The notes under the pieces are model-generated. The model was not told the origin of the DNA, did no database searches, and saw only the letters and a list, made by a program, of their open reading frames with translations. This document shows, piece after piece, positions 233 through 28,978 of a DNA stretch of 64,000 nucleotides. A program made the position numbers and the translations under genes. Numbering within the stretch: position 1 is the first letter of the stretch; each line of letters starts with the position of its first letter. Where the stretch lies: the IMG/VR virus record IMGVR_UViG_3300017991_000002, positions 62,001 to 126,000 of that record. One strand, 5' to 3'.

Positions 233-841
233 ATGGCCTTCAAGTTCGACATTATCTTGAAGCCAAAGAAGAGAGGTAACTGGCGTCCTGAAGTTATTAT
301 TACTCTGGAAATCCTGGCTCCGGCATTTCCACACAGGCCTTACGTACCACGATTACACATAGTCTCAATAAATATGAAGGACTTTATTGAGAAAGGGATA
401 AGGCCTGAAGAGGCAGAATGGTTTTGGCCTGTTACACACGAAAAGCCCTTCAAAATAATTTCACGAGATAAGTGGTTCCTTGATCTCAGCGACCTTGCAA
501 GGGATTCTTCTGATAATCTGAAGGAGGATTGCACCCATGCTTTTCATGATAGTCCAAAGAGGGGCGTGGAGGCTGCTTATCCCTTAACGGGAGGAGACAT
601 AGGTCCCGGTGGATTTCTTGAGGTAAACTATAGACACGATCTACATTTATTTCTGCCGTGGAGGCCGGGAATCAGGCCGGACTATTCAGACTATATGGCC
701 AGGTTTGAAAATGCAGGTCGCTGGTTTGCTGAAAGATTAAAGGACGGCGAAGATAGCGGACAAAACGATGAGATGATTATCTCTGTAACCTCTGCGAGAA
801 AAAAGTCGAGGGAGCAGGGTGTCAGGAAATTACGCTTTTGA
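233..841 (+). CDS. Hypothetical protein with C-terminal RKLRF tag
   Basis: AGGAGGT RBS; 202 aa; ends GVRKLRF*. Confidence 0.8.
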   Translation: MAFKFDIILKPKKRGNWRPEVIITLEILAPAFPHRPYVPRLHIVSINMKDFIEKGIRPEEAEWFWPVTHEKPFKIISRDKWFLDLSDLARDSSDNLKEDCTHAFHDSPKRGVEAAYPLTGGDIGPGGFLEVNYRHDLHLFLPWRPGIRPDYSDYMARFENAGRWFAERLKDGEDSGQNDEMIISVTSARKKSREQGVRKLRF

Positions 842-854
842 ATCTTTGATTACA

Positions 855-1336
855 GGGGGTGAAAATTGCGGCATAAGGATACTATAGCCGAAGCTGGCTC
901 GCCCGCGACCGATCCCTTTCAGAAGAAAGGGCAAATCGGGGAGTTGCACCATAAGGTGCGCCTGCGGAGGAGGAACCGAGAGGATTCTACGGTGGGGCAA
1001 GCGCCGGCCATGCCTGACCAGAGGTCCTATCGCACATTCTTGGGGATGCCTCGGGTGACTCGACAGAAAATAGAATCGAGGCCCAACTTATAAGAGGATT
1101 ATAATAGGATGAACGAAAAAGGAGACCGTGTTCAGTGTGCGAGCTTTATTATCATACTTGGGGATTCCATAGGCTAAGAAGCAGGGATTGATCCTACTCT
1201 TAGAGGATTCCGTTTCAATCTCGGTGGAGCTCAGGGTGGCCACCTTTAAAAACCCCTTGAGGTGGCGGGTGTGGTGAGGAAAGGACTAACCCATAACGGA
1301 GTGTGCAGATGCTGCTCTTACAAAAGGGGTTTTTTA
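855..1336 (+). ncRNA. Candidate large structured ncRNA (unclassified; ends and strand approximate)
   Basis: Intergenic, with many nested and long-range complementary segments (see findings). Confidence 0.55.
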
Positions 1337-1404
1337 TTTCCGCACAAATATAGTGGTCATTATGGCCACTTGAAATATACCCAACCTTTTCAGAAAGGAT
1401 TCAA

Positions 1405-1569
1405 GTGAGAAAGAATCAACGCTGTCCGGGGTGTGGTCGTCGGTACAAAAAATCCCACGACGATCGAGAAAAGAAGTATACGAAGGAATGCTTGTCTTAC
1501 AAGGAATACAAGGCAGCAGCTGCAAAAATTCGAGAAGCAAGAAATATAACCACCAAATCATCTTCGTAG
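1405..1569 (+). CDS. 54-aa basic protein with CxxC (weakly SEC-C-like)
   Basis: GAAAGGA RBS, GTG start, RKNQRCPGCGRRYKKSH; stop overlaps the RBS of the protease gene. Confidence 0.55.
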   Translation: MRKNQRCPGCGRRYKKSHDDREKKYTKECLSYKEYKAAAAKIREARNITTKSSS

Positions 1570-1579
1570 GAGGTGTCAC

Positions 1580-4027
1580 TTGAAGAAGAAGTTCAAAGAA
1601 GTACCCGTCGAATTACTCAGAAAAGTTTGTCCGACCGATATCATGAAATTCAAGACCACCGATGATATCGAACCGTCGTCCAATATCCTTGGCCAAAAAC
1701 GTGCCGTCGATGCTTTAAATATGGGCATTGAGATGAAAGGGAAGGGATTCAATATATTTATCACCGGCGCGCCAGGGACCGGAAGAAGGGAGATGGTTAA
1801 ATCATTTCTCGGGGGCTTGGAGGAGCAGAAGAAGGAGTTTCACGATATATGCTACGTGAACAACTTCCAGAATGAAGACATGCCTACCTTGCTTGCCCTG
1901 CCTAAGGGGCATGGTGTTGAATTGAAGATGGATATGGAGAACCTGACGGAAACAGTTATCCGGAGCACTCCCTCGATTCTTGAAAGTGATGAATACAGGG
2001 AAGCAAGGAAGAAGCTAACGGACGAGTACCAGGAAAAGGAGCAGGAGGTCTTCAAGGAGTTTGAGGAGGTATTAAGCGAGCATGGATTTGGCCTGATTCA
2101 AATTGCCAATCATGACGTGTCAAATGTGCGTCCAGAAATTGCTCCACTTATCCAAGACCGTCCCGTTCCATTGAGAATGCTTGAAGATCAGAAGAAGGAT
2201 GGGATAATCACCAAGGAGAAATTTGATAAGATCAAGAAGACTTATGATGAGCTGAAAATAGAGATGGAAAAGGCGTTCCGTAAATCCCGGGATATTGGTC
2301 GAGAGTTGAAGAAGAAGCTGTCCAATCTGAATGATGACCATATCGGCCCCATGATTGAGGATCAGGTCACTGATCTGTGCTCTAAGTATAAAAGCGAGAA
2401 AGTGGCCGATTATTTACAAGCTGCCAAGAACCATATGGTCTCCAATATCGACCGATTGCAGCCAAAAAACACCGGGGAGCCCCCAAAGAATGAAGCGGAG
2501 GCACAAGGCAGGATGATGGACATGATATTCGGCAGCCAGCGTGATCCGTTGCTGCCTTATAAAGTAAATGTTATCGTGGACAACTCTGATCGCTTGGATG
2601 ACCCTATCGTCTTCGAAAATTTCCCTTCCTATAAAAATCTGTTTGGCTGTATCGAACGGGTCATTGATGCTCGAGGTGGGGCGGTCATTGACTTCATGAA
2701 AATCAAGGCTGGGTCCCTTCTTCGTGCAGACGGCGGTTATCTTATCGTTGATGCCCTGGATATGCTAATGGAATACGGTGTCTGGCAGACCTTAAAGCGA
2801 ATCATGAAGTCCGGAGAGATTGAAATACAGAACTTTGACCCATGGTCTTTTGGTGGGACCCTCCTGAAACCCGAACCGGTCAAGGTCAATGTTAAGATCA
2901 TCCTCATCGGGAGCAGTCACATATATCATCTCCTACACCACTTTGATGAAGACTTCCATAAGATTTTCAAGATTCGGGCTGATTTTGATTCTTCCGTCCA
3001 GCTGGAGAATGAAAGTATTGTCAAGTATGCTGAGCACATCAAGAAAGTCACTGCTGAGGAAGGGTTGCTTCCTTTCTCCAAAAGCGGAGTTGCTGCTATT
3101 GTCGAACAAGGGCTCCGAGAGGTGGGACATCGAAGGAAACTGAGCACCCGGTTCAGTGTGATCGATAACATCGTCCAAGAATCAAGCTACTGGGCGCAGA
3201 AGGATGGCAAAAAGACGGTGGACCATAAGTCGGTCGAGAAGGCACTTCAGGAGAAACGGATCCGGCTGAATATGGTAGAGGAGAAGATCCAGGAGATGAT
3301 TGAGGAAGGAGTACTCCTGATCGATACCGAGGAGCCCAAGATAGGGCAGGTTAACGGTCTTGCCGTATACCAGCTTGGTGACTACATGTTTGGGAAACCT
3401 TCCAGAATCACCGCTCAGTCGTCATTAGGGCGTGCTGGGATATTGAATATAGAAAGAGAGGCCGAGATGTCAGGAAAGATTCACAATAAAGGAGTCTTAA
3501 TCCTGTCCGGTTATTTGAAGGGGAAATATGCTCAAGAATTCCCCTTGAGTATGGAGGCCTCCATTGCCTTTGAACAGTCCTATGCTGGGGTGGAGGGTGA
3601 TAGTGCTTCGAGCACTGAGGCATTTGCCCTTCTTTCTTCCCTGTCGGGACTGCCTTTAAGGCAGGGAATCGCCGTCACCGGTTCGATGGATCAGCTCGGT
3701 CAGATCCAACCGATTGGCGGGGTGAATGACAAGATAGAGGGATTCTTTGATGTCTGCAAGGCACGGGGCCTTACTGGTGAGCATGGAGTTATTATTCCTC
3801 ATCAGAATGTTGAGGATCTTATGCTTCGTAAGGACGTCGTCCAAGCGGTTAAATCCAAGAAATTTCATATTTACCCCATTAAGACAGTGGATGAGGGAAT
3901 GGAAATTTTGACCGGTAAGACAATCCATCAGGTGAATAAGCTTGTCAAGGAACATCTTAAAAGGATGAATGACTTGATGATGGAGACGGGGAACGGGAAC
4001 GGCAATAACAAGAAGGGCAAGAAGTAA
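1580..4027 (+). CDS. lonC: LonC-type Lon-like serine protease (S16) with degenerate AAA+ module
   Basis: GDSASS catalytic Ser, IGGVNDKIEGFF Lys, YVNNF and GSLLRADGGYL motifs, coiled-coil insert; Walker A GTGRRE. Confidence 0.9.
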   Translation: MKKKFKEVPVELLRKVCPTDIMKFKTTDDIEPSSNILGQKRAVDALNMGIEMKGKGFNIFITGAPGTGRREMVKSFLGGLEEQKKEFHDICYVNNFQNEDMPTLLALPKGHGVELKMDMENLTETVIRSTPSILESDEYREARKKLTDEYQEKEQEVFKEFEEVLSEHGFGLIQIANHDVSNVRPEIAPLIQDRPVPLRMLEDQKKDGIITKEKFDKIKKTYDELKIEMEKAFRKSRDIGRELKKKLSNLNDDHIGPMIEDQVTDLCSKYKSEKVADYLQAAKNHMVSNIDRLQPKNTGEPPKNEAEAQGRMMDMIFGSQRDPLLPYKVNVIVDNSDRLDDPIVFENFPSYKNLFGCIERVIDARGGAVIDFMKIKAGSLLRADGGYLIVDALDMLMEYGVWQTLKRIMKSGEIEIQNFDPWSFGGTLLKPEPVKVNVKIILIGSSHIYHLLHHFDEDFHKIFKIRADFDSSVQLENESIVKYAEHIKKVTAEEGLLPFSKSGVAAIVEQGLREVGHRRKLSTRFSVIDNIVQESSYWAQKDGKKTVDHKSVEKALQEKRIRLNMVEEKIQEMIEEGVLLIDTEEPKIGQVNGLAVYQLGDYMFGKPSRITAQSSLGRAGILNIEREAEMSGKIHNKGVLILSGYLKGKYAQEFPLSMEASIAFEQSYAGVEGDSASSTEAFALLSSLSGLPLRQGIAVTGSMDQLGQIQPIGGVNDKIEGFFDVCKARGLTGEHGVIIPHQNVEDLMLRKDVVQAVKSKKFHIYPIKTVDEGMEILTGKTIHQVNKLVKEHLKRMNDLMMETGNGNGNNKKGKK

Positions 4028-4040
4028 CCGGACACTACCA

Positions 4041-4075
4041 GGACATTATCCGGACATTTTGTCCGGTTAGTGTCC
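4041..4075 (+). terminator. Long hairpin after lonC
   Basis: GGACATTA-T-CCGGACA-TTT-TGTCCGG-T-TAGTGTCC. Confidence 0.5.
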
Positions 4076-4095
4076 TATTTAGGGGGACTATAATC

Positions 4096-4257
4096 ATGGG
4101 TATTTTAGTGTCACTTGTTCTTTTTGTTTTTATTTGGTGGATCCTCTGTAAGGTATTTACACCGGGATTCTTTACTTCCTTTATCAGGAGGAGAGCGCCT
4201 GATATCCCGGAAGCAGAGCGTAAACGCAAGCTAAAGATTCGGGAGGACAAGCAATGA
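4096..4257 (+). CDS. 53-aa single-TM protein with RKLKI tag
   Basis: MGILVSLVLFVFIWWILCK...ERKRKLKIREDKQ*; ATGA-coupled to the next gene; below the ORF-track cutoff. Confidence 0.75.
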   Translation: MGILVSLVLFVFIWWILCKVFTPGFFTSFIRRRAPDIPEAERKRKLKIREDKQ

Positions 4258-4643
4258 TCTGGTCAATCATATTGGGCACCTTCTTTGGGATATTTTTTGG
4301 TATATTCTACTTTCTCAACCCTCTTCCCGGGGAGAGTGATGTTCGGGATGGCCGCTATCGGGACATAGATAGTGTGGCAAAGATTCTCGGTACCTTGTTC
4401 TGGGAAGTTGGTGAGGATAATGAGATGAGGGCATACGTGCAGGTACATGAGGAAGCCGCTAGGATCGTAGAAGGCTGGAATGAACGTATTCTGTCCATGC
4501 GAGAGACCGAGTCCCGCCAGCCTTCTAGTGACCAAGAGAATGGCCTGAGGGAGGTACATATTGACATGGAGGAGGAAGAGGTGGAAACTAAACCTCTTAT
4601 AAGGAAGAGAAAACTCAGGATTGAGGGGAGGGGGAAATCATGA
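4254..4643 (+). CDS. N-terminal TM protein with RKLRI tag
   Basis: Hydrophobic N-terminus; ends RKRKLRIEGRGKS*. Confidence 0.8.
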   Translation: MIWSIILGTFFGIFFGIFYFLNPLPGESDVRDGRYRDIDSVAKILGTLFWEVGEDNEMRAYVQVHEEAARIVEGWNERILSMRETESRQPSSDQENGLREVHIDMEEEEVETKPLIRKRKLRIEGRGKS

Positions 4644-4999
4644 GGACTGTTTTATGGTTATTATTCTTTGGGGCTTCGTTTTATCTCTCCCTTCTTAGCG
4701 TGGTCACTAGAGATACTGCTAAGGGAAGGGGATTGGAGGGTGAGGATTATCATGTATTTATGGACATGAGGATTAAAAGGTCCCCAATTATCTGGTTCCT
4801 TCTCGCTGCGTCCGCTATTCCCTTAATATTCTTGCTGATATACGGTGTTTTTACTTTCCAGTGGCAGGCATTTGTACTGATCCTTATGGCCTCGTTGAGC
4901 CACAACCTAAGGAAGAGGGTTAACATATCCTACTGTATCGATCAGCTGATTAACTGTGTATGCTTAGGAGTTCTGTGGACATGGGTAATGAAGATATAA
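4640..4999 (+). CDS. Multi-pass membrane protein
   Basis: 3-4 hydrophobic segments; ATGA overlap. Confidence 0.75.
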   Translation: MRTVLWLLFFGASFYLSLLSVVTRDTAKGRGLEGEDYHVFMDMRIKRSPIIWFLLAASAIPLIFLLIYGVFTFQWQAFVLILMASLSHNLRKRVNISYCIDQLINCVCLGVLWTWVMKI

Positions 5000-5220
5000 A
5001 GCAGGTGAAGGGATATCACCTTTTATCAAGATCCGCGGTGATCCCCCTGGTTAATAGGGTTACCGGTGAGGAATATGTGATAAATAATGATCACATGTTC
5101 GGAATTTTACGACAGTTCGAGTTCCTGGTTCATGATGGAGAACTTATTCCTTTTAGCGAAGGTGTTTTGGAGACTCCCCAGCCTTTAAAATCAAAAAGAA
5201 AACTCAGAATTAATCCGTAG
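4981..5220 (+). CDS. Hypothetical protein with RKLRI tag
   Basis: AGGAG upstream of ATG 4981; ends SKRKLRINP*. Confidence 0.7.
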   Translation: MGNEDIKQVKGYHLLSRSAVIPLVNRVTGEEYVINNDHMFGILRQFEFLVHDGELIPFSEGVLETPQPLKSKRKLRINP

Positions 5221-5308
5221 CAGCTACCTGCCTTGCAAACGTGCACTTGCTGTTGCTTGGCAAATCTTGGTAGGTAAGGGAGGTGAGAAGTAGCCAGAAA
5301 GGAGTTGC

Positions 5309-5581
5309 ATGGATTTAAAAGAGTTTCAAGACCGTCTCGCTGAGGCCGGTTTGACTATCCAAGACTTAGAGAGTTTTTGCTTGGTAATGTATAGCCCTTT
5401 TGGCAAGAAGAGCAAAAACCCTATACCAACCTTAAGGGCTATTTTCAAGTTCCTGAACATTAGTATTCAAGTTCACTTTAAACGCTATGATGAAGAAATG
5501 GAGCCGGGACTGAACGTCCGAATGAAAAACTATGGTGATAATCTTCATGTATGGCTTAACTTTAAGGAGGAAGATAATTGA
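5309..5581 (+). CDS. Hypothetical protein
   Basis: AAGGAG RBS, 90 aa. Confidence 0.75.
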   Translation: MDLKEFQDRLAEAGLTIQDLESFCLVMYSPFGKKSKNPIPTLRAIFKFLNISIQVHFKRYDEEMEPGLNVRMKNYGDNLHVWLNFKEEDN

Positions 5582-5946
5582 GCAGAGAAGATGATTTGGC
5601 CGGAGTCTTAAAAGATATCCTTGATGCATTTTGGGATATGTCTCCCTTAGAGTATGTTCAATCAAGGGGGCACCCATGTATGAGCGATAAGATAGGAGAA
5701 GAAGTATTGAACCGCGCTCGAGAGCTCGTTAAAGGGAGCAAAACCACAGACGCAGTCAAGATTCTCCATAATCGTTACATTGGAGATGACGAAGAGCGAA
5801 AGAAGTCCCTGGAAAAGGAGCGGGTGATTAATAAGATTGCGGTTGAACTTGATCACATCCGCATGGATGGAATGTGTATTCCAAGAGATGCTAAGTCAAG
5901 AAGAAGAGAGGAGGATTTATGTTTGTTGTTGGTATCTTATTCTTAG
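5578..5946 (+). CDS. Hypothetical protein
   Basis: AGGAGG RBS, TTGA overlap. Confidence 0.7.
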   Translation: MSREDDLAGVLKDILDAFWDMSPLEYVQSRGHPCMSDKIGEEVLNRARELVKGSKTTDAVKILHNRYIGDDEERKKSLEKERVINKIAVELDHIRMDGMCIPRDAKSRRREEDLCLLLVSYS

Positions 5947-6242
5947 TTGGAGGATCCCTTGGAGCCGTTATTAACTTTAGCCATAAAGCATCACGGCAGT
6001 GGGTGGCGTGGGGAATACTATTCTCCATTTTTGCCTTGTTGGGAGCTTGGATGATGTTCTTGGACTGCTTGGCCCAACCTATCAATGTTATCTCCAAAAT
6101 GGTGGTTACAGATACACTGCCTCCTCCCCTGGAGGTGACATTTGATAGGCCGGTTACCGTTATTGTATCAAGAAGTATTTACCCCTGGTGGAAAGTAACC
6201 GATGACCCAATTTACTCCTATCATGTTGTCCTGAGGAGGTGA
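5919..6242 (+). CDS. Two-TM membrane protein
   Basis: GGAGG RBS; two hydrophobic helices. Confidence 0.75.
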   Translation: MFVVGILFLVGGSLGAVINFSHKASRQWVAWGILFSIFALLGAWMMFLDCLAQPINVISKMVVTDTLPPPLEVTFDRPVTVIVSRSIYPWWKVTDDPIYSYHVVLRR

Positions 6243-6246
6243 TCTT

Positions 6247-6594
6247 GTGAAGAGCAAGGAGATCAGGTCTATTTTTGATGAGGTGAGTAAAGATATATCA
6301 GTGATAGAGGACATAAGGAACGATACAAAAAGATTATTGACAAGCCTCGGTTTTTCAGTCCACAAGGACATCTGCATAATTGCCTCCCGTAACGGGGGTA
6401 TACAGATTGACTTCAGACTTGGCACCATGTCCTGTAACGGTAAGTTTGTAAAGACCCATGAGGATGTTGAGGAAGCTGTTGATATGCTCATAGAGGCTCT
6501 GGCGGAGAGAAGGAAGATCGTTGCCCACTCCAGAGAGAACCATGGGGTAATGAGATCGTTCTTGACGGTTTTTAATAATAGACGTATGAGTTAA
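6247..6594 (+). CDS. Hypothetical protein
   Basis: GGAGGT RBS, GTG start. Confidence 0.75.
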   Translation: MKSKEIRSIFDEVSKDISVIEDIRNDTKRLLTSLGFSVHKDICIIASRNGGIQIDFRLGTMSCNGKFVKTHEDVEEAVDMLIEALAERRKIVAHSRENHGVMRSFLTVFNNRRMS

Positions 6595-6671
6595 TAGCCC
6601 TTTTGAGAGTTTCGGCTATACAGAAACTCCAAGCAGGAAAAGCCTGCCGAGCAAAAACTTCAAAAAAGTTT

Positions 6672-6732
6672 TTGCTTTCCCGGTTGGGCTTTTCCTCTAT
6701 AATAATGAATTACCCCCCAAAAAAGGTAATTC
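6672..6732 (+). promoter_or_regulatory. Promoter-like element plus ATTACC/GGTAAT inverted repeat (copy 1)
   Basis: TTGCTT-N20-TATAAT then GAATTACC-N10-GGTAATTC; related copy at 32649-32710. Confidence 0.55.
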
Positions 6733-6742
6733 TGGAGTATAG

Positions 6743-6777
6743 AAGCCCATCCGGACACGTTCCGGGTGGGCTTTTTT
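6743..6777 (+). terminator. Intrinsic terminator
   Basis: AAGCCCATCCGGA-CACGT-TCCGGGTGGGCTT + T run. Confidence 0.8.
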
Positions 6778-6801
6778 GTTTATTTTTCCAGGGAGAGAAA
6801 A

Positions 6802-7329
6802 ATGGAATATTTAATAGATACGTTTTCTTTTGGGACCTTTGTAAACAGTCGTGGAGAAATGAGAGACGTGATGAGTTATATAACCGCGAGCAATTCGATC
6901 CCTAGAGATCAAGGTCTAGAGTTTCATAATCTAGATCATAATGGAGTAGTATGGTCTTTGGCAGGGCAACGAGGACCGATATTCTACTTCCAGGAATGGG
7001 ACGGTCTTAACAGTATATTTGTTACCACTGAAGGTCGTTCATTTCACGCTGATCCGTCGAGGCTGGGATGGGATATAGCCTGTGTAATTAAAGGACTACT
7101 GGCGGAAAATAGGAGGACACTTTTGGTCTTGACTCCTGTCAATAACAATGAGTATCCGGTAGGGTTTGCCATATGCAGAGTTTATGTGGTTCGTGCAAAT
7201 TTGATATGGGCTGTCCTAAATAAAAACAGGACTACTGCTGTTCCTATTGGTGAATGGATAGCCGAAACCGATACTGATGTCGGAAAGAGCCCCCCCTTGA
7301 AGGGTCGCAGAAGGTTGAGGATTGTATGA
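6802..7329 (+). CDS. Hypothetical protein with RRLRI tag
   Basis: GGGAG RBS; ends GRRRLRIV*. Confidence 0.8.
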   Translation: MEYLIDTFSFGTFVNSRGEMRDVMSYITASNSIPRDQGLEFHNLDHNGVVWSLAGQRGPIFYFQEWDGLNSIFVTTEGRSFHADPSRLGWDIACVIKGLLAENRRTLLVLTPVNNNEYPVGFAICRVYVVRANLIWAVLNKNRTTAVPIGEWIAETDTDVGKSPPLKGRRRLRIV

Positions 7330-7595
7330 GATTATATATGAGCAAAGAAGGGGTAACGGAAGCCATAAGAGTAATGGGAGAATTAATTGATCTTCTCGAT
7401 GCCCCCGGTATCATGGCCGATTTCCAATCGCGACAAATGGTCAGGGCAATACGAGGACATTTCAGAACTATTGCCGGACATTTTAATAAACACGGACAGA
7501 TAACATTTATTGATTTGGAGATGAAGCTTAAGACACCGGAAGACTTACAACAATATAGGAGAAGATTGAGACTGGAGGATGACAATGGCATATAA
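7326..7595 (+). CDS. Hypothetical protein with RRLRL tag
   Basis: ATGA overlap; ends RRRLRLEDDNGI*. Confidence 0.75.
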   Translation: MRLYMSKEGVTEAIRVMGELIDLLDAPGIMADFQSRQMVRAIRGHFRTIAGHFNKHGQITFIDLEMKLKTPEDLQQYRRRLRLEDDNGI

Positions 7596-8094
7596 ATTAT
7601 ACCTACCTCATCCGGTATCGTTTAGGACATCGCTCACTAATTCTTCTTACCTCAGTAGAAAATTCCGCGGTTTGTTGAGGAATATTATTGGTACCATAGA
7701 GCTGGATAGGGGACGTCTTGTTGATACAGGTGGGGGAACAGTAGCATTTCTAAGGTCGGTCAATCCAGATACACATTACACAATTCATCTTAGTGGATGG
7801 CATCCTATCCCTGAAACCGTAATCAGAAACTTTGGAGTTATCTTTTCCTCCTTGATAGAAATAGACTCAGTTGTCCTTTTTACAGCCTGTAACTTTCCAC
7901 AAGGATCCGAGAAAATCGGCTACAGGGTTATGAGGGGAGATATTCGGCGTCTATATTTTCCGGCCTGTATAAAACTGGAAAACGGGGTCTATGTTCGGAT
8001 TGACTCCGACTTTGCCGTAAAACACCTCGGCCGGGATGAAGGGAAGAGGAGAGGTAAAGTAACGACAAGAAGATTGAGAGTAGGAGGTCGGTAA
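7585..8094 (+). CDS. Hypothetical protein (paralog of 8094-8552) with RRLRV tag
   Basis: Shares EKIGY...FPACI.L.NG with the next gene. Confidence 0.8.
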   Translation: MAYKLYLPHPVSFRTSLTNSSYLSRKFRGLLRNIIGTIELDRGRLVDTGGGTVAFLRSVNPDTHYTIHLSGWHPIPETVIRNFGVIFSSLIEIDSVVLFTACNFPQGSEKIGYRVMRGDIRRLYFPACIKLENGVYVRIDSDFAVKHLGRDEGKRRGKVTTRRLRVGGR

Positions 8095-8552
8095 TGGAGC
8101 ATGAGAAGGAATTCTTACCCCATAATATACAGATCAAGACATCTATTAACAGCACTCCCTATTTTAGAAGGAGGCTCCGTGACTTGTTGTTCCGTCTTCC
8201 TGGAGACGATTCATACTCAACAGACAAACCACTGGGAGAAATAGCAAACGTGCATTTTCATCCCCCAACAGCCATTATTTATTGGTATTCCTCAATACCT
8301 CGTTCATTATTCAAAGGGTTTGCTCTCGTTTTCTGTGAGATTATAAAGAAGGGGGAGTTGGCTTACTTTGTCTCGCACGACTTTGAGAAGATCGGATATG
8401 CCATTTGGCGAGGGGGAATCCACGAAGTAATTTTTCCGGCATGTATCAGACTTGCAAATGGGACTATTATGCCTGCCTCAGAATTTGACTTTATAAGGAA
8501 CGCTAAGATAGAAAAGGTACCTTCAGTAAGAAGGTTAAGGATTCCAAAATGA
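8094..8552 (+). CDS. Hypothetical protein (paralog of 7585-8094) with RRLRI tag
   Basis: TAATG overlap; ends SVRRLRIPK*. Confidence 0.8.
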   Translation: MEHEKEFLPHNIQIKTSINSTPYFRRRLRDLLFRLPGDDSYSTDKPLGEIANVHFHPPTAIIYWYSSIPRSLFKGFALVFCEIIKKGELAYFVSHDFEKIGYAIWRGGIHEVIFPACIRLANGTIMPASEFDFIRNAKIEKVPSVRRLRIPK

Positions 8553-8851
8553 GTGGCTGGGTAGAAGACCTCATCATGGGCCCCAGCCAATGTTACTTCT
8601 TCGTTGTTTTTAAGGACACGCGGTATTGCCTGTACCTTAGATGGCGGGACAGGAACCCGTGGAAGGGGTATATTATCAAGGATGTTCAATGGGTAGGGAC
8701 GATAACAGGAGGTAAGATGTCTGATGATCTCCTAAAGCAAAGAGGACTCTACTTTAGACAGGAAGAACACAAAAAGGCGCAATCGGCCATGATGCTTGCC
8801 TGGAATGATTATGTGAAAGGAAAGGTAAATATTTCCTTTGGGAGGAACTGA
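8549..8851 (+). CDS. Hypothetical protein
   Basis: Coupled ORF; YLRWR..PW motif. Confidence 0.75.
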   Translation: MSGWVEDLIMGPSQCYFFVVFKDTRYCLYLRWRDRNPWKGYIIKDVQWVGTITGGKMSDDLLKQRGLYFRQEEHKKAQSAMMLAWNDYVKGKVNISFGRN

Positions 8852-9138
8852 TGTCAAAACGATATATAGAGGATACAAAAATGAATAACGAATTTGATGA
8901 CCCAAGAATTGTTTCATTGGTACGAGGGATAGAAAGAGTAAAATACGAGGCCGAAAGTGCCCAGTGTCTAGAGGTTGTTGTTGTCCTTAATACTCTCCTG
9001 GGCGCCCTCCTCTGCGGCAGGTTGGTGGACCTGACAAAACTCTGTCAGGAGTTTGCTGGGGAGATAAGAGAAGAGCTTGCCAGCAAAAGACCAAAAAGAA
9101 AGATTCGAGTCAATGAAGATACCACATCGACCAGATAA
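8851..9138 (+). CDS. Hypothetical protein with RKIRV tag
   Basis: TGATG overlap; ends KRKIRVNEDTTSTR*. Confidence 0.7.
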   Translation: MSKRYIEDTKMNNEFDDPRIVSLVRGIERVKYEAESAQCLEVVVVLNTLLGALLCGRLVDLTKLCQEFAGEIREELASKRPKRKIRVNEDTTSTR

Positions 9139-9367
9139 TATTGGTCCTTTCAAGGTAAGAAAGAGTAAGAAATATACAAGAAAGTGGAGAATCTGTTATG
9201 GTTCACTTACTGTATTGGACAGGATAAATTTTAAGCGGGATGCTGCCCGAGAAGCTTACAACATAAACAAGCCGTGGAGGGACGCCATAACTAGGCTGAA
9301 TATAACAGATGGAGTTATTCCAACCTTCAGGAGACTTAAAGTGAGGGCGGAAGAAGGAGAAGAATAA
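9113..9367 (+). CDS. Hypothetical protein with RRLKV tag
   Basis: Ends FRRLKVRAEEGEE*; start uncertain. Confidence 0.7.
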   Translation: MKIPHRPDNIGPFKVRKSKKYTRKWRICYGSLTVLDRINFKRDAAREAYNINKPWRDAITRLNITDGVIPTFRRLKVRAEEGEE

Positions 9368-9673
9368 ATGATATCACCGCACATGTTAGGGAGATATGAG
9401 TTCCACAGTCAGTCAACTGATAGCCATAAATTTTATCATGTATACTTTGACCACATGACAGGAACATATACATGCGAACATGGTCGATGTGGAAGAACTT
9501 CTATGAAGATCATGAGAGGTATTCCCGAGGAGAAGGCCCTCAAAAAGATAGTGGAGAAGATTAATAAAGGATATGAGAAAGTGACCGATCGCGGTTATAC
9601 CATAGAAGTCAATCGGGGTTCATCCCCTCCAACCCATAAAGTGAGAAAGCTTACTGTTCAGGAAAAGGGATAA
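9368..9673 (+). CDS. WGR-like domain protein with RKLTV tag
   Basis: SHKFY...HGRCG...EKINKGY pattern typical of WGR domains. Confidence 0.7.
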   Translation: MISPHMLGRYEFHSQSTDSHKFYHVYFDHMTGTYTCEHGRCGRTSMKIMRGIPEEKALKKIVEKINKGYEKVTDRGYTIEVNRGSSPPTHKVRKLTVQEKG

Positions 9674-9939
9674 TGCTATTTACTAACCGGATGGTCAGAG
9701 ACATGCTAAGGGACATAAACTGTATACCTGATCAGGGGCTTGTCGACATGGTAAGAGATGATCTGAACAGAGATCAGATATATAACGAAATCGCCAGAGC
9801 TCATACTAACTACGGCCGTATGCTTTATATCGATTTTTTAAGGGTTCTTGAGGAGAAAGTAGATATAGCTCTGAGAGCTTTAACTATTGAAAAGGCACGT
9901 TTGGGGGAGCCTATAAGGAGGTTGCGTATACATGAATAA
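9673..9939 (+). CDS. Hypothetical protein with RRLRI tag
   Basis: TAATG overlap; ends PIRRLRIHE*. Confidence 0.75.
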   Translation: MLFTNRMVRDMLRDINCIPDQGLVDMVRDDLNRDQIYNEIARAHTNYGRMLYIDFLRVLEEKVDIALRALTIEKARLGEPIRRLRIHE

Positions 9940-10132
9940 TAAAGGAATTATTGAGCTGCAACATAGTATCGAGTCAATCCTGTCTGACCCACAGATAATT
10001 CCTGTTTTTGATTTTCCTATAGAGGAGACTTACTCTTCCCTAATAGAGAGGCATCGGATACCGGAGGACATGTTAGTCAAACCAAAAAGGATATACTCTG
10101 TCAGAAAATTGAGGTTACCGTGCGTATCCTAA
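9932..10132 (+). CDS. Hypothetical protein with RKLRL tag
   Basis: Ends SVRKLRLPCVS*. Confidence 0.7.
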   Translation: MNNKGIIELQHSIESILSDPQIIPVFDFPIEETYSSLIERHRIPEDMLVKPKRIYSVRKLRLPCVS

Positions 10133-10536
10133 AGGTTGGGAAGAAGCCAAGAGCCAAGCGTCTGGAGATGCCTCGGCTTATTGATTGGGACAACCCAGAA
10201 ACTCAGAGAATAATTAGGGCGGCCAGGTGTTATGTTCGTAGAGATAGAGGTTTGGAGTACCCCAGCGGAACCAGATTATGGAGGGGAAGACAGGGAGGTA
10301 TATGGTTACCTTCTAATGGGGAGTGGCAGGAATGTTGCAATCATATAAAGCCTCCGATACCTAACTACCCATTTACACACTACAGACATTGTAAAACTAT
10401 AAAGCATATAATTCATCTTTATAAGGTTGATTATAAGGCTACAAAGGAGTTTATAAACCTGATAGTAAAGGGGGTGATACCTATGGAGGACAGTAAGATA
10501 GGGAAGCATAAACGGGTCTTAAGGATACGAACTTAA
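10120..10536 (+). CDS. Basic Cys/His protein with RVLRI tag
   Basis: W.P...E.QECC..I.PP....PF....HC.T.KH motif; ends KRVLRIRT*. Confidence 0.75.
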   Translation: MRILKVGKKPRAKRLEMPRLIDWDNPETQRIIRAARCYVRRDRGLEYPSGTRLWRGRQGGIWLPSNGEWQECCNHIKPPIPNYPFTHYRHCKTIKHIIHLYKVDYKATKEFINLIVKGVIPMEDSKIGKHKRVLRIRT

Positions 10537-10548
10537 AAAGGAGTAAGT

Positions 10549-10725
10549 ATGGTGACAGAATCTATGGAATATGAGTGCCTGGAGGATGCTCTACGATATG
10601 CTTTCGACGACTGCTTGGAGTTAAGGGAGAAGATAAAAGGAAAGAAGAAAAAGCGGGTCGGTAAGCTCGATAATAAGTTAAAGCGGTCTAGAAAGGGCCG
10701 AGAGAGGAGAGTAAGGAACAAATAG
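10549..10725 (+). CDS. 58-aa protein with acidic N-half and very basic C-half
   Basis: AAGGAG RBS; ...KIKGKKKKRVGKLDNKLKRSRKGRERRVRNK*. Confidence 0.6.
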   Translation: MVTESMEYECLEDALRYAFDDCLELREKIKGKKKKRVGKLDNKLKRSRKGRERRVRNK

Positions 10726-10786
10726 ATCGGATAAATCCGCTCCACATATTGATAAGTGGAGACATTATGTCTGGGAAAGGAGGCCT

Positions 10787-11053
10787 ATGCTTAGGTTTTT
10801 TACTCTGCTTATGCATAAACACAGATGGCGTCGGATCGCTTTCTTTTTTGCGCCGCCTTCTGGGGAGCTGTTTCGACGATCCCTGGACGGTCCTACCAGG
10901 GAGAGGGCGACATACGGTATAACGACCATTGTCTGGGAATGTGATATTTGCGGAAAGTCTAAAAAGATGGAAGTTCTCGGCGAGGTTGTTGATCGGCCCC
11001 CTGTCGAGCAAAGGACGGAAAAGTACTCTAGGAGGCTTAGCATCCAAAGGTAG
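10787..11053 (+). CDS. Zn-ribbon-like protein with RRLSI tag
   Basis: AGGAGG RBS; HKHRW...CDICG; ends SRRLSIQR*. Confidence 0.75.
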   Translation: MLRFFTLLMHKHRWRRIAFFFAPPSGELFRRSLDGPTRERATYGITTIVWECDICGKSKKMEVLGEVVDRPPVEQRTEKYSRRLSIQR

Positions 11054-11064
11054 AAAGGAGATAC

Positions 11065-11274
11065 GTGTTTATCCTAACATTTGAACCAGGGGCTGTGGCT
11101 ATAAAGCCATGGAAACCGGGACAGCCACTAAAAGGAGATAGATTAGTGGCTACTATACCAGAATTAGGTGAATTGCTATGGGATCTTGAGATTGCTGAGG
11201 ACATGATCAATGATGCCGTAGAAAGATTGGAGAGCAGTGAGCAGTCTATCACTCTTCCAGTCAAGACACATTAA
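11065..11274 (+). CDS. Hypothetical protein
   Basis: AAGGAG RBS, GTG start. Confidence 0.7.
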   Translation: MFILTFEPGAVAIKPWKPGQPLKGDRLVATIPELGELLWDLEIAEDMINDAVERLESSEQSITLPVKTH

Positions 11275-11319
11275 AGAAGTTTTACCCAACCACAAACCCG
11301 TATTACAGGAGGTGTAACT

Positions 11320-12063
11320 ATGGGTATCTTTCAATTGAACCATCGTCAAGAGTTGAACACTTTACAAGTACCATCCGCAACCGCAACGTATCAGCCAATC
11401 CCCCATCGGGATGCTTTGGAGATTGTGGAGGACCAGTTCAAGAGAAGCGGTTTTTCCATTCAAAAGGAGTCAATTAGTATTGGGCAGGAGGGTCTCGTCA
11501 TGGCAGCCAAGTGGCAGTTGGAGCCTGAAGGGTTTGAAGCGATGCCGTCGCATTCGCCTATTGCTGTTGTCCTGAACGGTAATACGCGGAAGCACACCCT
11601 CAGAGTTGGTTTTGGGCTGAATTGCATGGTTTGTACCAACGGCATGTTCATTTCTGAGAAGTCAATCAAGAGAAAACACACCAAGAATATCTATCTTGAC
11701 ATCCCGGACATGGTCTATGATATGATCCAAAGCTCGGAGAATTGGTACTCGAAGTTTATGGGATTTCTGGAGGAGTTGAAGGATTTTGAACCAAGACGAG
11801 AGTACGTCAATGATATGTTGGTTCGATCAATGGAGGCAGGAGTCATCGCTTCCTCTCACATCAGAAAAGTCCTGAACATCTTCAGCGATCCAACTTATGA
11901 AGAGTATGGTAATGACACGTTGTATACTCTCCACAACGCTTATACCGAGGTTCTTCGTGACACCTCGACGGATATGGAAATTCCGCGGAAAACGATCAAA
12001 CTGAACGAAATGATCGATGGGATCAGGAACAATTTTCGATCTCGTAAACTCAGAATTCAGTAG
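11320..12063 (+). CDS. DUF932-like protein with RKLRI tag
   Basis: TYQPIPH, VCTNG, KRKHT, LHNAYTE motifs; ends RSRKLRIQ*. Confidence 0.75.
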   Translation: MGIFQLNHRQELNTLQVPSATATYQPIPHRDALEIVEDQFKRSGFSIQKESISIGQEGLVMAAKWQLEPEGFEAMPSHSPIAVVLNGNTRKHTLRVGFGLNCMVCTNGMFISEKSIKRKHTKNIYLDIPDMVYDMIQSSENWYSKFMGFLEELKDFEPRREYVNDMLVRSMEAGVIASSHIRKVLNIFSDPTYEEYGNDTLYTLHNAYTEVLRDTSTDMEIPRKTIKLNEMIDGIRNNFRSRKLRIQ

Positions 12064-12073
12064 GAGGTGCAGT

Positions 12074-12550
12074 ATGACAAGAAAAGTCAGAGTCAACAAC
12101 AACCACAATATTGTTCACCAGATTACCTTACAGAATGTAGAGAATCTACGGAAGATGGAGGAAAAAATCAAGAGTGAGTTGAAAGAGGTGGTCGAGAAAA
12201 GAAAGGAAGCTGAGGACGAGGTTCTTGATAAGATCAAGAGACGGTTCTCGGTCGAACCGGGTGAACTGTCCGCCAAGATCGAAGAGAAAACGAAACGAAA
12301 CTCGGTCAGCTGGAAGACAGAATTCGTCTCCTTTGTTGGGAAACAGATCCACAGTAGACTGAGACGGAGCACCGATATACTCGAAAAGCTGATAGAAATC
12401 TGCGGTTCCCAGAAGAAAGCGAAATCCATCCTCAAGAAATTTTCCAATAACGAGGATGCTGCTTTTATTCATGCCGCGGGAGAGGCGGAAGCAAAGAAAA
12501 TCTCCGACAGCCAGCCTGAGGAGATCCAGGAAATATTAGTTATCGAATAG
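12074..12550 (+). CDS. Coiled-coil hypothetical protein with N-terminal RKVRV
   Basis: AGGAGGT RBS; starts MTRKVRV. Confidence 0.8.
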   Translation: MTRKVRVNNNHNIVHQITLQNVENLRKMEEKIKSELKEVVEKRKEAEDEVLDKIKRRFSVEPGELSAKIEEKTKRNSVSWKTEFVSFVGKQIHSRLRRSTDILEKLIEICGSQKKAKSILKKFSNNEDAAFIHAAGEAEAKKISDSQPEEIQEILVIE

Positions 12551-12559
12551 TTTACCAGC

Positions 12560-12586
12560 AGGGGCCCTTTTTGGGCCCCTCCTTTT
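12560..12586 (+). terminator. Intrinsic terminator
   Basis: AGGGGCCC-TTTTT-GGGCCCCT-CCTTTT. Confidence 0.7.
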
Positions 12587-12596
12587 GGAGATTATT

Positions 12597-13019
12597 ATGG
12601 GCACCTTTAAGATTGGTAAAGCTTCCATAGCTTCCCTTGCATTCCGGCAGTTGGAGCTCATGGACAACGATTTTCAATATGCCAAGTATTGTCTGTCCTC
12701 TACCCTGCCTCCTCTGTTAGAATTCTTTACTGATCTCCCAAGTGAGGAGATCGCTGAAGTCAATACGAAATTAATAAAACGAACAGACGGGGGTTGGAAT
12801 ATTATAGTCAGGGCGTTGACGGAAGTGAACAGGGATTGTACTAATAGTGCGTTGAAAACTCTTCCAGACCATGCAATAGTTCAGTTCAGAGACGGGGGTT
12901 TCGAAATAACATTCAAGTTCCCGGGACCGAAAATGTTCAGATCCAGGGTATGGGAAGGTTTAGTAGCGCCAGATACCAGAAAGCCTGTTAGGAAGTTAAA
13001 CATCAATAAGGAGGAGTAG
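12597..13019 (+). CDS. Hypothetical protein with RKLNI tag
   Basis: GGAG RBS; ends PVRKLNINKEE*. Confidence 0.75.
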   Translation: MGTFKIGKASIASLAFRQLELMDNDFQYAKYCLSSTLPPLLEFFTDLPSEEIAEVNTKLIKRTDGGWNIIVRALTEVNRDCTNSALKTLPDHAIVQFRDGGFEITFKFPGPKMFRSRVWEGLVAPDTRKPVRKLNINKEE

Positions 13020-13021
13020 CT

Positions 13022-13927: not shown

Positions 13928-13941
13928 CAAAGGAGGTTTTT

Positions 13942-28484: not shown

Positions 28485-28978
28485 GCACCAGAGCAAATAT
28501 CGTAGTCAAGGACGAGTATGATACTTTATGGTTCTATCAGCACGGAGATGGATACCCTGAAGGAGTACTGCCAACGTTGTTCAAGTTTATGAACTGGGTC
28601 AAGAGCGGTAGAATCAGGGACAATGCCATTCAGTCTAGTGGGTGGTTGATCCTGCTGGGAGTAGAGTCTCTGATAGTGGACATGACACGATACAGGCCAG
28701 AAAAGACAAGGAGAAGAAATCCATTTGAACCCTGCAATGATTCTTTGTATGGGTGGAAGGCTGGGAGTATCGAGCCGACGGTTGGGCAGCATGGTGATAT
28801 TGACTATAAGTATATTGTTGATCTTGAAGAGAAAACAGTAATGGTTTACGAACCAGGGTGGGAAGGAGAACCTGATAAGCTCATAGGTAAAATGAACTCC
28901 AAGGGAAATATGACCAAGATCAAAGTGAGATCAGCAGAGCCGAAGACCTCAAGAGTAAGAAGGTTGAGGGTATCGTGA
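28481..28978 (+). CDS. MSTR...HxDGYP family protein with RRLRV tag
   Basis: FYQHGDGYPEG; ends RVRRLRVS*. Confidence 0.85.
   Translation: MSTRANIVVKDEYDTLWFYQHGDGYPEGVLPTLFKFMNWVKSGRIRDNAIQSSGWLILLGVESLIVDMTRYRPEKTRRRNPFEPCNDSLYGWKAGSIEPTVGQHGDIDYKYIVDLEEKTVMVYEPGWEGEPDKLIGKMNSKGNMTKIKVRSAEPKTSRVRRLRVS

What the first reader, a model, noticed from the sequence alone, without database searches (positions are those of the whole stretch)
1580..4027. Phage-encoded LonC-type protease at the head of the tagged-gene cluster
SEEN: the Ser-Lys dyad is intact (GDSASS / GGVNDK), but Walker A reads GAPGTGRRE (no Lys) and Walker B reads YLIVDA (no Glu), with a long coiled-coil insert. KNOWN: this matches the ATP-independent LonC subfamily, which captures unfolded substrates with coiled-coil arms. 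INFERENCE: a LonC in a phage is unusual. The genes at 233, 4096 and 4254 that flank it carry the tag, so it is the most obvious candidate reader, for example for timed removal of early proteins. Proximity alone does not prove this.
Basis: partly seen in the sequence, partly recalled or inferred. Interest (0 to 1): 0.75.

Follow-up and report, generated by a model that had tools for sequence, protein, structure and literature searches.

The report
Bacterial-type LonC protease in jumbo phage
A 205-kb sediment phage carries an intact copy of a bacterial ATP-independent Lon-type protease (LonC), which is rare in phages, but only its position links it to the C-terminal 'R-K-L-R-I' tag found on a fifth of the phage's genes.

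Summary
ORF 1580-4027 (+) encodes an 815-aa protein that meets every sequence and fold criterion of the LonC subfamily. These are an intact Ser675/Lys718 dyad, degenerate Walker A (GTGR) and Walker B (VDA), a helical-hairpin insert, and both LonC-specific protease-domain insertions. Its best solved match is MtaLonC. The motif degeneracy is a family trait, shared by its 119 closest listed homologues. The gene is a single capture from bacteria and remains a typical family member.

The tag is also real. A loose motif marks 66 of 334 genes, and the strict motif is 107-fold enriched at C-termini. It is conserved in orthologues of related phages.

The proposed link, LonC as tag reader, is not supported:
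- Tagged genes fill three clusters on both strands, so adjacency is expected by chance (46-69%).
- An independently LonC-bearing jumbo phage has no tag.
- Bacterial LonC loci have no tag.
- In the one tagged protein modelled, the tag sits on a flexible tail of a well-folded domain, which LonC enzymes cannot unfold.

Other candidate readers exist, including two phage AAA+ ATPases. The most likely role of LonC here is general ATP-independent protease and holdase activity. This is a new member of a known kind.

The parts
1580..4027 (+). lonC: 815-aa LonC-subfamily Lon-like protease (P0001)
   Evidence: ORF listing; Pfam AAA_32, LonB_AAA-LID, LonC_helical and Lon_C; MtaLonC at E 1e-89; Foldseek 8k8v TMq 0.71
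1568..1573 (+). AGGAGG ribosome-binding site, 6 nt before the TTG start at 1580
   Evidence: sequence
1766..1792 (+). degenerate Walker A-like motif GAPGTGRRE (Arg69 in place of the P-loop Lys)
   Evidence: G..GTGR is present in all 120 aligned sequences (phage copy plus its 119 closest homologues)
1910..2458 (+). LonC-type helical-hairpin extension (residues about 111-293) with a beta-hairpin at 170-191, inserted in the AAA-like alpha/beta domain
   Evidence: AF2 secondary structure; Pfam LonC_helical at 89-122; whole-length structural match to the MtaLonC cryo-EM structure
2738..2755 (+). degenerate Walker B-like motif YLIVDA (no catalytic Glu)
   Evidence: compare MtaLonC GYLILDA (PMC3391209)
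3329..3919 (+). S16 Lon proteolytic domain (residues about 584-780)
   Evidence: Pfam Lon_C 584-775; alignment to MtaLonC
3596..3613 (+). GDSASS with catalytic Ser675 (codon 3602-3604)
   Evidence: invariant in alignment A1 and in 120 homologues
3716..3733 (+). GGVNDK with catalytic Lys718 (codon 3731-3733)
   Evidence: invariant K718 in A1
3755..3778 (+). LonC-specific insertion 1, CKARGLTG, matching the consensus CX3GLX(G/E)
   Evidence: sequence; consensus from PMC3391209
3836..3850 (+). LonC-specific insertion 2, VVQAV, matching phi-X2-A-phi in helix alpha5
   Evidence: sequence; consensus from PMC3391209
233..841 (+). context only: first tagged gene of the + strand cluster (202 aa, ends ...GVRKLRF). 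Not shown to be functionally linked to lonC
4096..4643 (+). context only: two overlapping tagged genes just downstream (53 aa ending ...RKLKIREDKQ; 129 aa ending ...RKLRIEGRGKS). Not shown to be linked to lonC

Best explanation
The ORF is a genuine, probably active LonC: a ring-forming Lon-family serine protease. Its AAA-like module has lost the residues needed for ATP hydrolysis, and it carries helical-hairpin arms for catching substrates. A 205-kb jumbo phage from a sediment metagenome (123-bp direct terminal repeats) captured it once from a bacterium. The gene is kept under purifying selection as an ordinary member of the family. By inference from MtaLonC and TTC1975, it acts in the infected cell as an ATP-independent protease and holdase for unfolded, damaged or intrinsically disordered polypeptides. 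It would serve as an auxiliary proteostasis or recycling gene rather than a dedicated reader of the C-terminal R-[KR]-L-[RK]-[IVLM] tag. Shown here: identity, motifs, fold, bacterial origin, conservation, rarity in phages, and the lack of any tag association beyond position. Inferred: lack of ATPase activity, oligomeric ring, substrate class and physiological role.
For: - **Domains, motifs and fold:**
- **LonC-specific insertions:** both are present.
- **Not LonB:** TIGR00764 scores 165 bits against a cut-off of 516.
- **Homologues:** more than 2,400 proteins match, and the closest listed are about 46-53% identical.
- **Closest relatives are bacterial:** P0002, P0003 and P0004 lie among bacterial housekeeping genes such as Bat/MoxR, DXP reductoisomerase, PFK and ClpP.
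- **Phylogeny:** in trees the phage copy is nested among bacterial LonC, sister to P0002 and P0004 with 99% local support. It is separate from the LonC of another jumbo phage.
- **Conservation:** 173 of 187 positions that are at least 95% conserved in bacterial homologues are kept, most of the 14 changes are conservative, and domain charges lie within the family range.
- **Adjacency to tags is chance-level:**
- **LonC without tags:** phage G001 has 0 strict and 1 loose tag in 465 ORFs. About 0.8 Mb of bacterial LonC loci have 0 strict tags in 2,585 ORFs.
- **Tag position:** the one tagged protein modelled has a folded core with pLDDT above 90 and a tail with pLDDT 45-62.
- **Enzymology:** MtaLonC degrades only unfolded substrates and failed on the folded POP1-beta8 degron fusion (PMC3391209).
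Against: No experiment exists on this clade, whose Walker A has Arg whereas MtaLonC keeps Lys. ATP-independence and substrate class are therefore extrapolated. Two rare features, a phage LonC and a proteome-wide tag, occur in one genome, which could reflect a link. The phage branch is long (0.87 against a median of 0.25), which allows some functional shift. A classical AAA+ gene lies 2.2 kb upstream in this phage and about 7.4 kb upstream of the LonC in phage G001, so LonC may not act alone. A general proteostasis role is a default assignment, not a demonstrated one.
Confidence: 0.6

Rival explanations
1. One reading: LonC itself recognises the C-terminal tag and removes tagged proteins. A variant that fits the enzymology better is that it only clips off their disordered tagged tails, acting as a tag eraser.
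For: lonC lies inside a tagged cluster. Both features are rare yet coincide in one genome. Tags sit on Pro/Lys/Glu-rich tails, and the tail is low-confidence in the one protein modelled, so a protease without an unfoldase could reach it. The helical-hairpin arms of LonC take part in substrate recognition (PMC13069640).
Against: Proximity is at chance level. Phage G001 has LonC without tags. Bacterial LonC loci have no tags. There is no phage-specific change in conserved positions or in charge. MtaLonC could not degrade a folded protein carrying a C-terminal degron. The MtaLonC cleavage site mapped in that paper has hydrophobic P1 and P3 residues, whereas the tag is strongly basic. No LonC was found for tag-bearing relatives (weak evidence). 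A papain-like protease at genome 132,660-133,460 is just as close to tagged genes.
Confidence: 0.12
2. LonC is the proteolytic half of a two-part machine. A phage classical AAA+ unfoldase would recognise and unfold substrates, possibly the tagged ones, and hand them to the ATPase-dead LonC chamber, much as PAN or Cdc48 feeds the 20S proteasome. The candidate is the Cdc48/PAN-like gene at genome 58,830-61,375, which is split after Walker B by an HNH-endonuclease ORF.
For: The split AAA+ gene has an intact Walker A (GLPGAGKS), Walker B (VWVDE), a pore-loop-like LVG and a second region of homology. It lies 2.2 kb upstream of lonC on the same strand. The independent LonC phage G001 also has its single PF00004 match about 7.4 kb upstream of its LonC, with ClpP 1.2 kb downstream. 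A 43%-identical homologue of the split AAA lies directly upstream of tagged genes in another metagenomic lineage, L137/L138.
Against: The two phage AAA+ proteins share only generic AAA similarity. I know of no precedent for an external unfoldase docking on LonC, whose entry face carries the helical-hairpin arms. Splicing of the AAA gene is unproven, and Rfam finds no intron there. Bacterial LonC loci show no conserved AAA partner.
Confidence: 0.08
3. The tag is a sorting or docking signal read by something other than LonC, so LonC is a bystander. Candidate readers are prohead or portal incorporation (as with encapsulin cargo peptides or the tail of the HK97 protease), a phage AAA+ translocase such as the membrane-anchored BCS1-like protein, and a host factor such as ClpX, whose MuA-type signal is RRKKAI.
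For: Tagged proteins include short paralogues of the head-maturation protease (genome 49,742-50,296) and of the major capsid protein (134,738-135,736), together with a Lar-like anti-restriction protein. The large terminase ends in a conserved basic and hydrophobic GRKxRKIIGIN. A BCS1-like AAA+ with an N-terminal hydrophobic helix lies inside the - strand tagged cluster. The motif lies 0-9 residues from the C-terminus, which does not suggest recognition of a free carboxylate.
Against: No reader has been identified. No tagged gene lies in the structural block at 137-205 kb. The analogies to encapsulin, HK97 and MuA come from memory and were not tested here. Packaging 66 different cargo proteins would be unprecedented.
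Confidence: 0.45
4. The phage lonC is a decaying or functionless passenger gene.
For: It is a single capture with no known phage relatives and sits on a long branch.
Against: The ORF is full length with a good ribosome-binding site. The catalytic dyad and 92.5% of family-invariant positions are intact.
Confidence: 0.05

Closest known systems
MtaLonC (Meiothermus taiwanensis) and TTC1975 (Thermus thermophilus), the LonC subfamily of MEROPS S16
   Same: It has the same domain order: a split AAA-like alpha/beta domain with a helical-hairpin extension, then a lid, then the S16 protease. It shares the Ser-Lys dyad, both LonC-specific protease-domain insertions, a Walker B without Glu, and the absence of both a LonA N-domain and a LonB transmembrane insert.
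   Different: Foldseek reports about 23-26% identity over the whole length. Walker A reads GTGR (Arg) instead of SLGK. It belongs to a large, uncharacterised mesophilic clade found in Ignavibacteriota, Thermodesulfobacteriota, Acidobacteriota, WOR-3 and Aminicenantes. It is encoded by a phage.
Archaeal LonB (for example Thermococcus onnurineus, PDB 3K1J)
   Same: It shares the AAA_32 and LonB lid domains and the protease fold. It is the second-best structural and sequence match.
   Different: LonB has functional Walker motifs and a transmembrane insert. Here TIGR00764 scores far below its cut-off, at 165 against 516 bits, the insert is a soluble helical hairpin, and the Walker motifs are degenerate.
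LonC of an unrelated jumbo phage (IMG/VR 3300009034 contigs, G001 and G002)
   Same: It is a phage-borne LonC of 41% identity with the same Pfam-type architecture. A classical AAA+ gene lies a few kb upstream.
   Different: It is an independent capture. That genome has no C-terminal tag and no T4-like portal match. It has a ClpP-like gene 1.2 kb downstream.
Degron-protease systems such as ssrA or MuA tags read by ClpXP, or sul20/beta20 degrons read by LonA (from general knowledge)
   Same: A short C-terminal peptide on many unrelated proteins would be a natural degradation signal.
   Different: Those proteases contain an ATP-driven unfoldase, and LonC does not. The tag here is internal to the tail by 0-9 residues. 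No tag-protease co-occurrence was found.

Membership tests
LonC subfamily of Lon (S16) proteases | C-terminal S16 protease domain with a Ser-Lys catalytic dyad | tested here: met
   Pfam Lon_C at E 5.9e-11. Ser675 and Lys718 are invariant in alignments and align to the MtaLonC dyad region.
LonC subfamily of Lon (S16) proteases | Degenerate AAA+ motifs: a non-canonical Walker A and a Walker B that lacks the catalytic Glu | tested here: met
   GAPGTGRRE and YLIVDA. The same pattern occurs in all 119 closest listed homologues. MtaLonC reads GPPSLGKHE and GYLILDA (PMC3391209).
LonC subfamily of Lon (S16) proteases | [quoted passage not shown] | tested here: met
   C726-KAR-GL-T-G733 and V753-VQ-A-V757, checked against the consensus in PMC3391209.
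LonC subfamily of Lon (S16) proteases | Type-specific helical-hairpin extension inserted in the AAA alpha/beta domain, with no LonA N-domain and no LonB transmembrane segment | tested here: met
   The AF2 model has long helices at 111-167 and 212-288 flanking a beta-hairpin at 170-191. Pfam LonC_helical matches. The whole-length match is to the MtaLonC cryo-EM structure 8k8v. The feature is described in PMC13069640.
LonC subfamily of Lon (S16) proteases | No ATPase activity; ATP-independent degradation of unfolded substrates only | not testable with these tools
   This is inferred from the motifs and from MtaLonC/TTC1975 biochemistry. No member of the GTGR clade has been assayed, to my knowledge.
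LonC subfamily of Lon (S16) proteases | Closed-ring oligomer (hexamer or heptamer) | not tested
   Only a monomer model was made.
Archaeal-type LonB (TIGR00764) | Score above the NCBIfam equivalog cut-off; functional Walker motifs; transmembrane insert | tested here: not met
   165.5 bits against a cut-off of 516.6. The Walker motifs are degenerate and the insert is a soluble helical hairpin.
Tag-directed (degron) proteolysis system with LonC as reader | The protease can unfold or otherwise process folded tagged substrates | tested here: not met
   The AAA motifs are degenerate. The one tagged protein modelled has a well-folded core. MtaLonC failed on a folded degron fusion. Tail clipping remains possible.
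Tag-directed (degron) proteolysis system with LonC as reader | Tag and protease co-occur across genomes | tested here: inconclusive
   LonC occurs without the tag in G001 and in bacterial loci. The tag occurs in relatives for which no LonC was found, but those relatives are only short contigs.
Tag-directed (degron) proteolysis system with LonC as reader | The tag is necessary and sufficient for LonC binding or cleavage | not testable with these tools
   This needs biochemistry or multimer modelling, and structure prediction accepts single chains only.
Known anti-phage defence proteins (PADLOC) | Match to a defence-system protein model, such as the BrxL Lon-like protease | tested here: not met
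   No PADLOC family matched LonC at E <= 0.001.

The most novel reading that the evidence does not exclude
The phage runs a private proteolysis code. About a fifth of its proteome carries a C-terminal R-K-L-R-I tag on a flexible tail. The captured LonC, alone as a tail-clipping eraser or fed by the intron-split Cdc48/PAN-like AAA+ encoded 2.2 kb upstream, reads that tag to time the removal or activation of these proteins.
Probability: 0.12. Interest if true: 0.85.

Novelty: new member of a known kind. Interest (0 to 1): 0.4.

Why it matters
LonC is a poorly understood, widespread bacterial protease and chaperone with no known physiological substrates. A phage that has captured one and keeps it intact offers a compact setting in which to ask what LonC does.

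This report also removes a tempting but unsupported link. The striking proteome-wide C-terminal tag of this phage lineage is real and conserved, and its reader is unknown. LonC should be treated as only one of several candidates. The others are two phage AAA+ ATPases, the prohead or portal, and host ClpX-type factors.

Tried and rejected
- **Close relatives in IMG/VR.** I searched with LonC, the portal, a portal alignment and a DUF932 alignment. Only a 13.5-kb contig of a relative with 51% portal identity and unrelated phages turned up, so lonC presence could not be scored in relatives.
- **INPHARED LonC hits.** The hits labelled 'Acinetobacter phage MD-2021a' are bacterial chromosome, carrying efp, rpmE, cstA and dacA. 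I rejected them as phage examples.
- **IMG/VR locus L004.** It matches 76% over 97 aa, but the match is an in-frame continuation of an upstream ORF at a contig end, it shares nothing else with G000, and it may be a chimaera.
- **Literature.** A string search for the tag found nothing relevant. Searches for phage LonC found none.
- **ExoX-like protein.** I tested whether the ExoX-like protein of relative L027 is an untagged orthologue of the tagged gene at 61886-62251. There was no alignment, so I dropped it.
- **Myxococcus phage Mx1.** It gives the best cultured-phage hit to a tagged protein, but there are no tags in 40 kb of its small-gene region.
- **LonC arm charge.** I looked for acidic adaptation of the LonC arms to a basic tag and found none.
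- **Low-coding stretch 841-1404.** There is no Rfam match, no tRNA or tmRNA, and the folding z-score is -1.55.
- **Promoters and terminators.** The sigma-70 promoter and terminator scan around lonC is at or below chance, so no timing inference is possible.
- **PADLOC.** LonC has no match.
Full report
**What the genome is.** The window is bases 62,001-126,000 of a 205,367-bp IMG/VR virus record with 123-bp direct terminal repeats. It was assembled from a sediment metagenome. The record is a phage. It has a T4-type portal, a PolA-UDG fusion, DnaB-like and ResIII helicases, an SbcCD-like nuclease and a large terminase. It also has a T4-type head protease and a Gp23-type capsid gene. Almost all coding in the window is on the + strand. 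The lineage is very sparsely sampled. In 5.8 billion proteins the portal has only two relatives, at 63% and 51% identity, on contigs of at most 13.5 kb. No cultured phage exceeds about 27% portal identity.

**The observation.** ORF 1580-4027 (+) starts at TTG with AGGAGG six bases upstream and encodes 815 aa. Pfam finds AAA_32, LonB_AAA-LID, LonC_helical and Lon_C. The best solved relative is MtaLonC/TTC1975 at E 1e-89, well ahead of archaeal LonB at 7e-36 and of LonA. The NCBIfam LonB model scores far below its cut-off.

- GAPGTGRRE at residues 63-71
- YLIVDA at residues 387-392
- GDSASS with Ser675
- GGVNDK with Lys718

Liao et al. 2012 (PMC3391209) define LonC by two protease-domain insertions, CX3GLX(G/E) and phi-X2-A-phi. 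Both are present, as C726-KARGLT-G733 and V753-VQA-V757. An AlphaFold2 model (mean pLDDT 77.5) shows the type-specific helical-hairpin extension. It has long helices at 111-167 and 212-288 around a beta-hairpin at 170-191. Foldseek's best match is the full-length MtaLonC cryo-EM structure 8k8v, with TMq 0.71 and TMt 0.79.

**One refinement.** The Walker degeneracy is not a phage peculiarity. All 119 closest listed homologues read G..GTGR and L-[VI]-[LVF]-[ND]-A. This large clade differs from the Thermus/Meiothermus proteins, which keep the Walker A Lys, and to my knowledge it has not been assayed.

**Origin.** More than 2,400 homologues were found, and the closest listed ones are about 46-53% identical. 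The closest, P0002, P0003 and P0004, sit among ordinary bacterial genes. Named genomes with the gene belong to Ignavibacteriota, Thermodesulfobacteriota, Acidobacteriota, Bacteroidota, WOR-3, Aminicenantes and others. In trees the phage protein is nested among the bacterial ones on a long branch. It is sister to P0002 and P0004 with 99% local support. It is not sister to the only other phage-borne LonC I found, on IMG/VR 3300009034 contigs G001 and G002. So this is a single horizontal capture. The donor is unresolved and host assignment from this gene is not possible.

The protein keeps 173 of 187 positions that are at least 95% conserved in bacterial homologues, and most of the 14 changes are conservative. 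Net charges of the arms and of every other domain lie inside the family range.

Phage LonC really is rare. INPHARED gives three tblastn hits. Two are mislabelled bacterial chromosome and the third is a partial match on an unannotated 22.5-kb fecal contig that I did not examine. A pattern-limited IMG/VR scan gives only G001/G002 and a doubtful contig-end fragment.

**The tag.** The motif is R-[KR]-L-[RK]-[IVLM], lies 0-9 residues from the C-terminus, and is often preceded by [FY]-x-[KR]. My gene call is heuristic and gives 334 genes.
- The strict motif occurs in the last 14 residues of 48 genes, against 8 internal hits in 59,713 positions. That is a 107-fold enrichment.
- A looser pattern marks 66 genes, or 20%.
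- Codons vary synonymously, so the constraint acts on the peptide.
- Controls give 0 strict hits in 1,876 six-frame ORFs from 519 kb of other phage DNA, and 0 in 2,585 ORFs from 798 kb of bacterial LonC loci. The same method gives 46 in G000.

Tagged proteins are 47-332 aa long and mostly unrelated to each other. The 20 residues before the motif are enriched in Pro, Lys and Glu. In the one tagged protein modelled, a confident folded core (residues 10-190, pLDDT above 90) is followed by a low-confidence tail that carries the motif.

The tag is conserved in orthologues from related metagenomic phages, while the surrounding residues diverge:
- DUF932 family: FRSRKLRIQ, FVRKLNIQF and HARRLRMV
- 237-aa family: SKRVLKVQESV, RRKLRLGD..., GRKLCLG... 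and FKRKITL...

More distant homologues end without any such tail. The tag is therefore a real, selected, lineage-specific add-on.

**Is LonC its reader?** Tagged genes occupy three clusters:

| Genome region | Strand | Tagged genes | All genes |
|---|---|---|---|
| 12-50 kb | - | 37 | 89 |
| 62-91 kb | + | 23 | 68 |
| 124-136 kb | + | 6 | 29 |

None lie in the replication or structural blocks. Within the three clusters, 46% of untagged genes have a tagged immediate neighbour and 69% have one within two genes. The position of LonC therefore carries no information. A papain-like protease at 132.7-133.5 kb is equally 'adjacent'.

The independent LonC phage G001 (241 kb) has 0 strict and 1 loose tag among 465 ORFs, and no comparable C-terminal enrichment. 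Bacterial LonC loci have none. No LonC above 53% identity exists in the protein database or in the JGI metagenome scan, although both hold contigs of the tag-bearing relatives. This is weak evidence, because those contigs are short.

The enzymology also argues against removal of whole proteins. MtaLonC degrades unfolded substrates only, and it failed on a stable protein carrying a C-terminal degron that LonA accepted. At most, LonC could clip the flexible tails.

**Other candidate readers.** The phage encodes two classical-clade AAA+ ATPases.
- One is a BCS1-like protein with an N-terminal hydrophobic helix. It lies inside the - strand tagged cluster.
- The other is a Cdc48/PAN/FtsH-like gene 2.2 kb upstream of lonC. 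It is split right after Walker B by an HNH-endonuclease ORF.
- A 43%-identical homologue of the split gene lies directly upstream of tagged genes in another metagenomic lineage.
- G001 has its only PF00004 match about 7.4 kb upstream of its LonC.

This is a post hoc lead for an unfoldase-plus-LonC pair, not evidence for one.

Tagged short paralogues of the head protease and of the capsid protein point instead to assembly or targeting. So does a conserved basic and hydrophobic C-terminus on the terminase.

**Verdict.** The finding is a genuine and rare phage-borne LonC: a new member of a known kind, probably doing what bacterial LonC does. The proposed role as tag reader is unsupported, and I put it at about 0.12 alone, or about 0.2 including an AAA+-assisted version. 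The tag itself is the remarkable feature of this genome, and its reader remains open.

**Caveats.**
- My gene calls and tag regular expressions are heuristic.
- G001's status as a phage rests on the IMG/VR and CheckV classification and on a weak terminase match.
- All functional statements about LonC are extrapolated from MtaLonC and TTC1975.

Noticed in passing
whole genome G000; in the window, 24 genes such as 233-841, 4096-4257, 4254-4643, 4960-5220, 6766-7329, ... 28481-28978 and 61886-62251: A proteome-wide C-terminal tag, R-[KR]-L-[RK]-[IVLM], lies on Pro/Lys/Glu-rich tails (flexible in the one protein modelled) of 66 of 334 genes. It is 107-fold enriched at C-termini, varies synonymously at the codon level, is absent from control phage and bacterial DNA, and is conserved in orthologues of related metagenomic phages. 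Its reader is unknown.
   Followed up: partly
G000:C1:58830-61375 (+), just upstream of the window (loci L012:18830-19990, L013:27-752, L013:812-1372): A classical AAA+ ATPase gene (Cdc48/PAN/FtsH-like) is interrupted right after Walker B (VWVDE | IEKALGG) by a 242-aa ORF with a weak HNH match (E 0.004, below the Pfam cut-off). It is probably an intron, though Rfam finds none. It lies 2.2 kb upstream of lonC. Its C-terminus, ...KRSLRYPSQTTNV, is tag-like.
   Followed up: partly
G000:C1:24320-25777 (-) (L011:4323-5777): A BCS1-like classical AAA+ ATPase with an N-terminal hydrophobic helix lies in the middle of the - strand tagged cluster. It could be a translocase or unfoldase for tagged proteins.
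   Followed up: partly
G000:C1:169647-172165 (-), outside the window (L023, L024): The major capsid (Gp23-type) gene is in pieces. One group I intron is detected at about 171,885-172,165 (Rfam RF00028, 64 bits), and a weaker match lies at about 170,228-170,433. A 340-aa TnsA-like endonuclease ORF (170,235-171,257) lies between the capsid pieces.
   Followed up: partly
G000:C1:49742-50296 (-) and 134738-135736 (+): There are tagged short paralogues of the head-maturation protease (184 aa; the real one, 529 aa, is at 172,416-174,005) and of the C-terminal half of the capsid protein (332 aa).
   Followed up: partly
window 51690-53795 (+): The large terminase ends in ...SKGRKTRKIIGIN, a basic and hydrophobic C-terminus. 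It is conserved in two relatives (GRKERKIIGIN and GRKYRRIIDVN...) and loosely resembles the tag.
   Followed up: no
window 841-1579: There is a low-coding, GC-rich stretch between the first tagged gene and lonC. It has no Rfam, tRNA or tmRNA match and a folding z-score of -1.55. A small zinc-ribbon-like ORF (1405-1569, containing CPGCGRRY) directly precedes lonC.
   Followed up: yes
L137:693-1904 and L138:14-1853 (JGI 3300032799 and 3300038692): Another metagenomic lineage has a homologue (43% identity) of the split AAA+ immediately followed by genes ending in tag-like motifs (...YYRMIRVAE and ...FKRKITLMEEEDGKPN).
   Followed up: partly
L002/L003 (IMG/VR 3300009034_000001 and _000002), locus 1700-14402: An unrelated 241-kb jumbo phage has its own LonC (41% identity). 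A classical AAA+ gene lies about 7.4 kb upstream and a ClpP-like gene 1.2 kb downstream. It has no C-terminal tag.
   Followed up: partly
L027:1314-4697 and 9438-12107 (JGI 3300017987): In the relative with 51% portal identity, the terminase carries an intein, and an 889-aa protein has a major-vault-protein shoulder domain (precomputed Pfam hits).
   Followed up: no
L004:about 4400-6020 (IMG/VR 3300025314_001004): An upstream ORF runs in frame, without a stop, into a Lon protease domain (76% identical to residues 621-717) at the end of the contig. It is either a fusion or an assembly chimaera.
   Followed up: no
INPHARED records CAKLQF020000018.1 and CAKLQH020000016.1: Contigs filed as 'Acinetobacter phage MD-2021a' carry efp, rpmE, cstA, ampG and dacA. 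They are bacterial chromosome, so their 'phage' LonC is spurious.
   Followed up: yes
G000:C1:132660-133460 (+): A papain-family (Peptidase_C1) cysteine protease gene lies inside the third tagged cluster.
   Followed up: no
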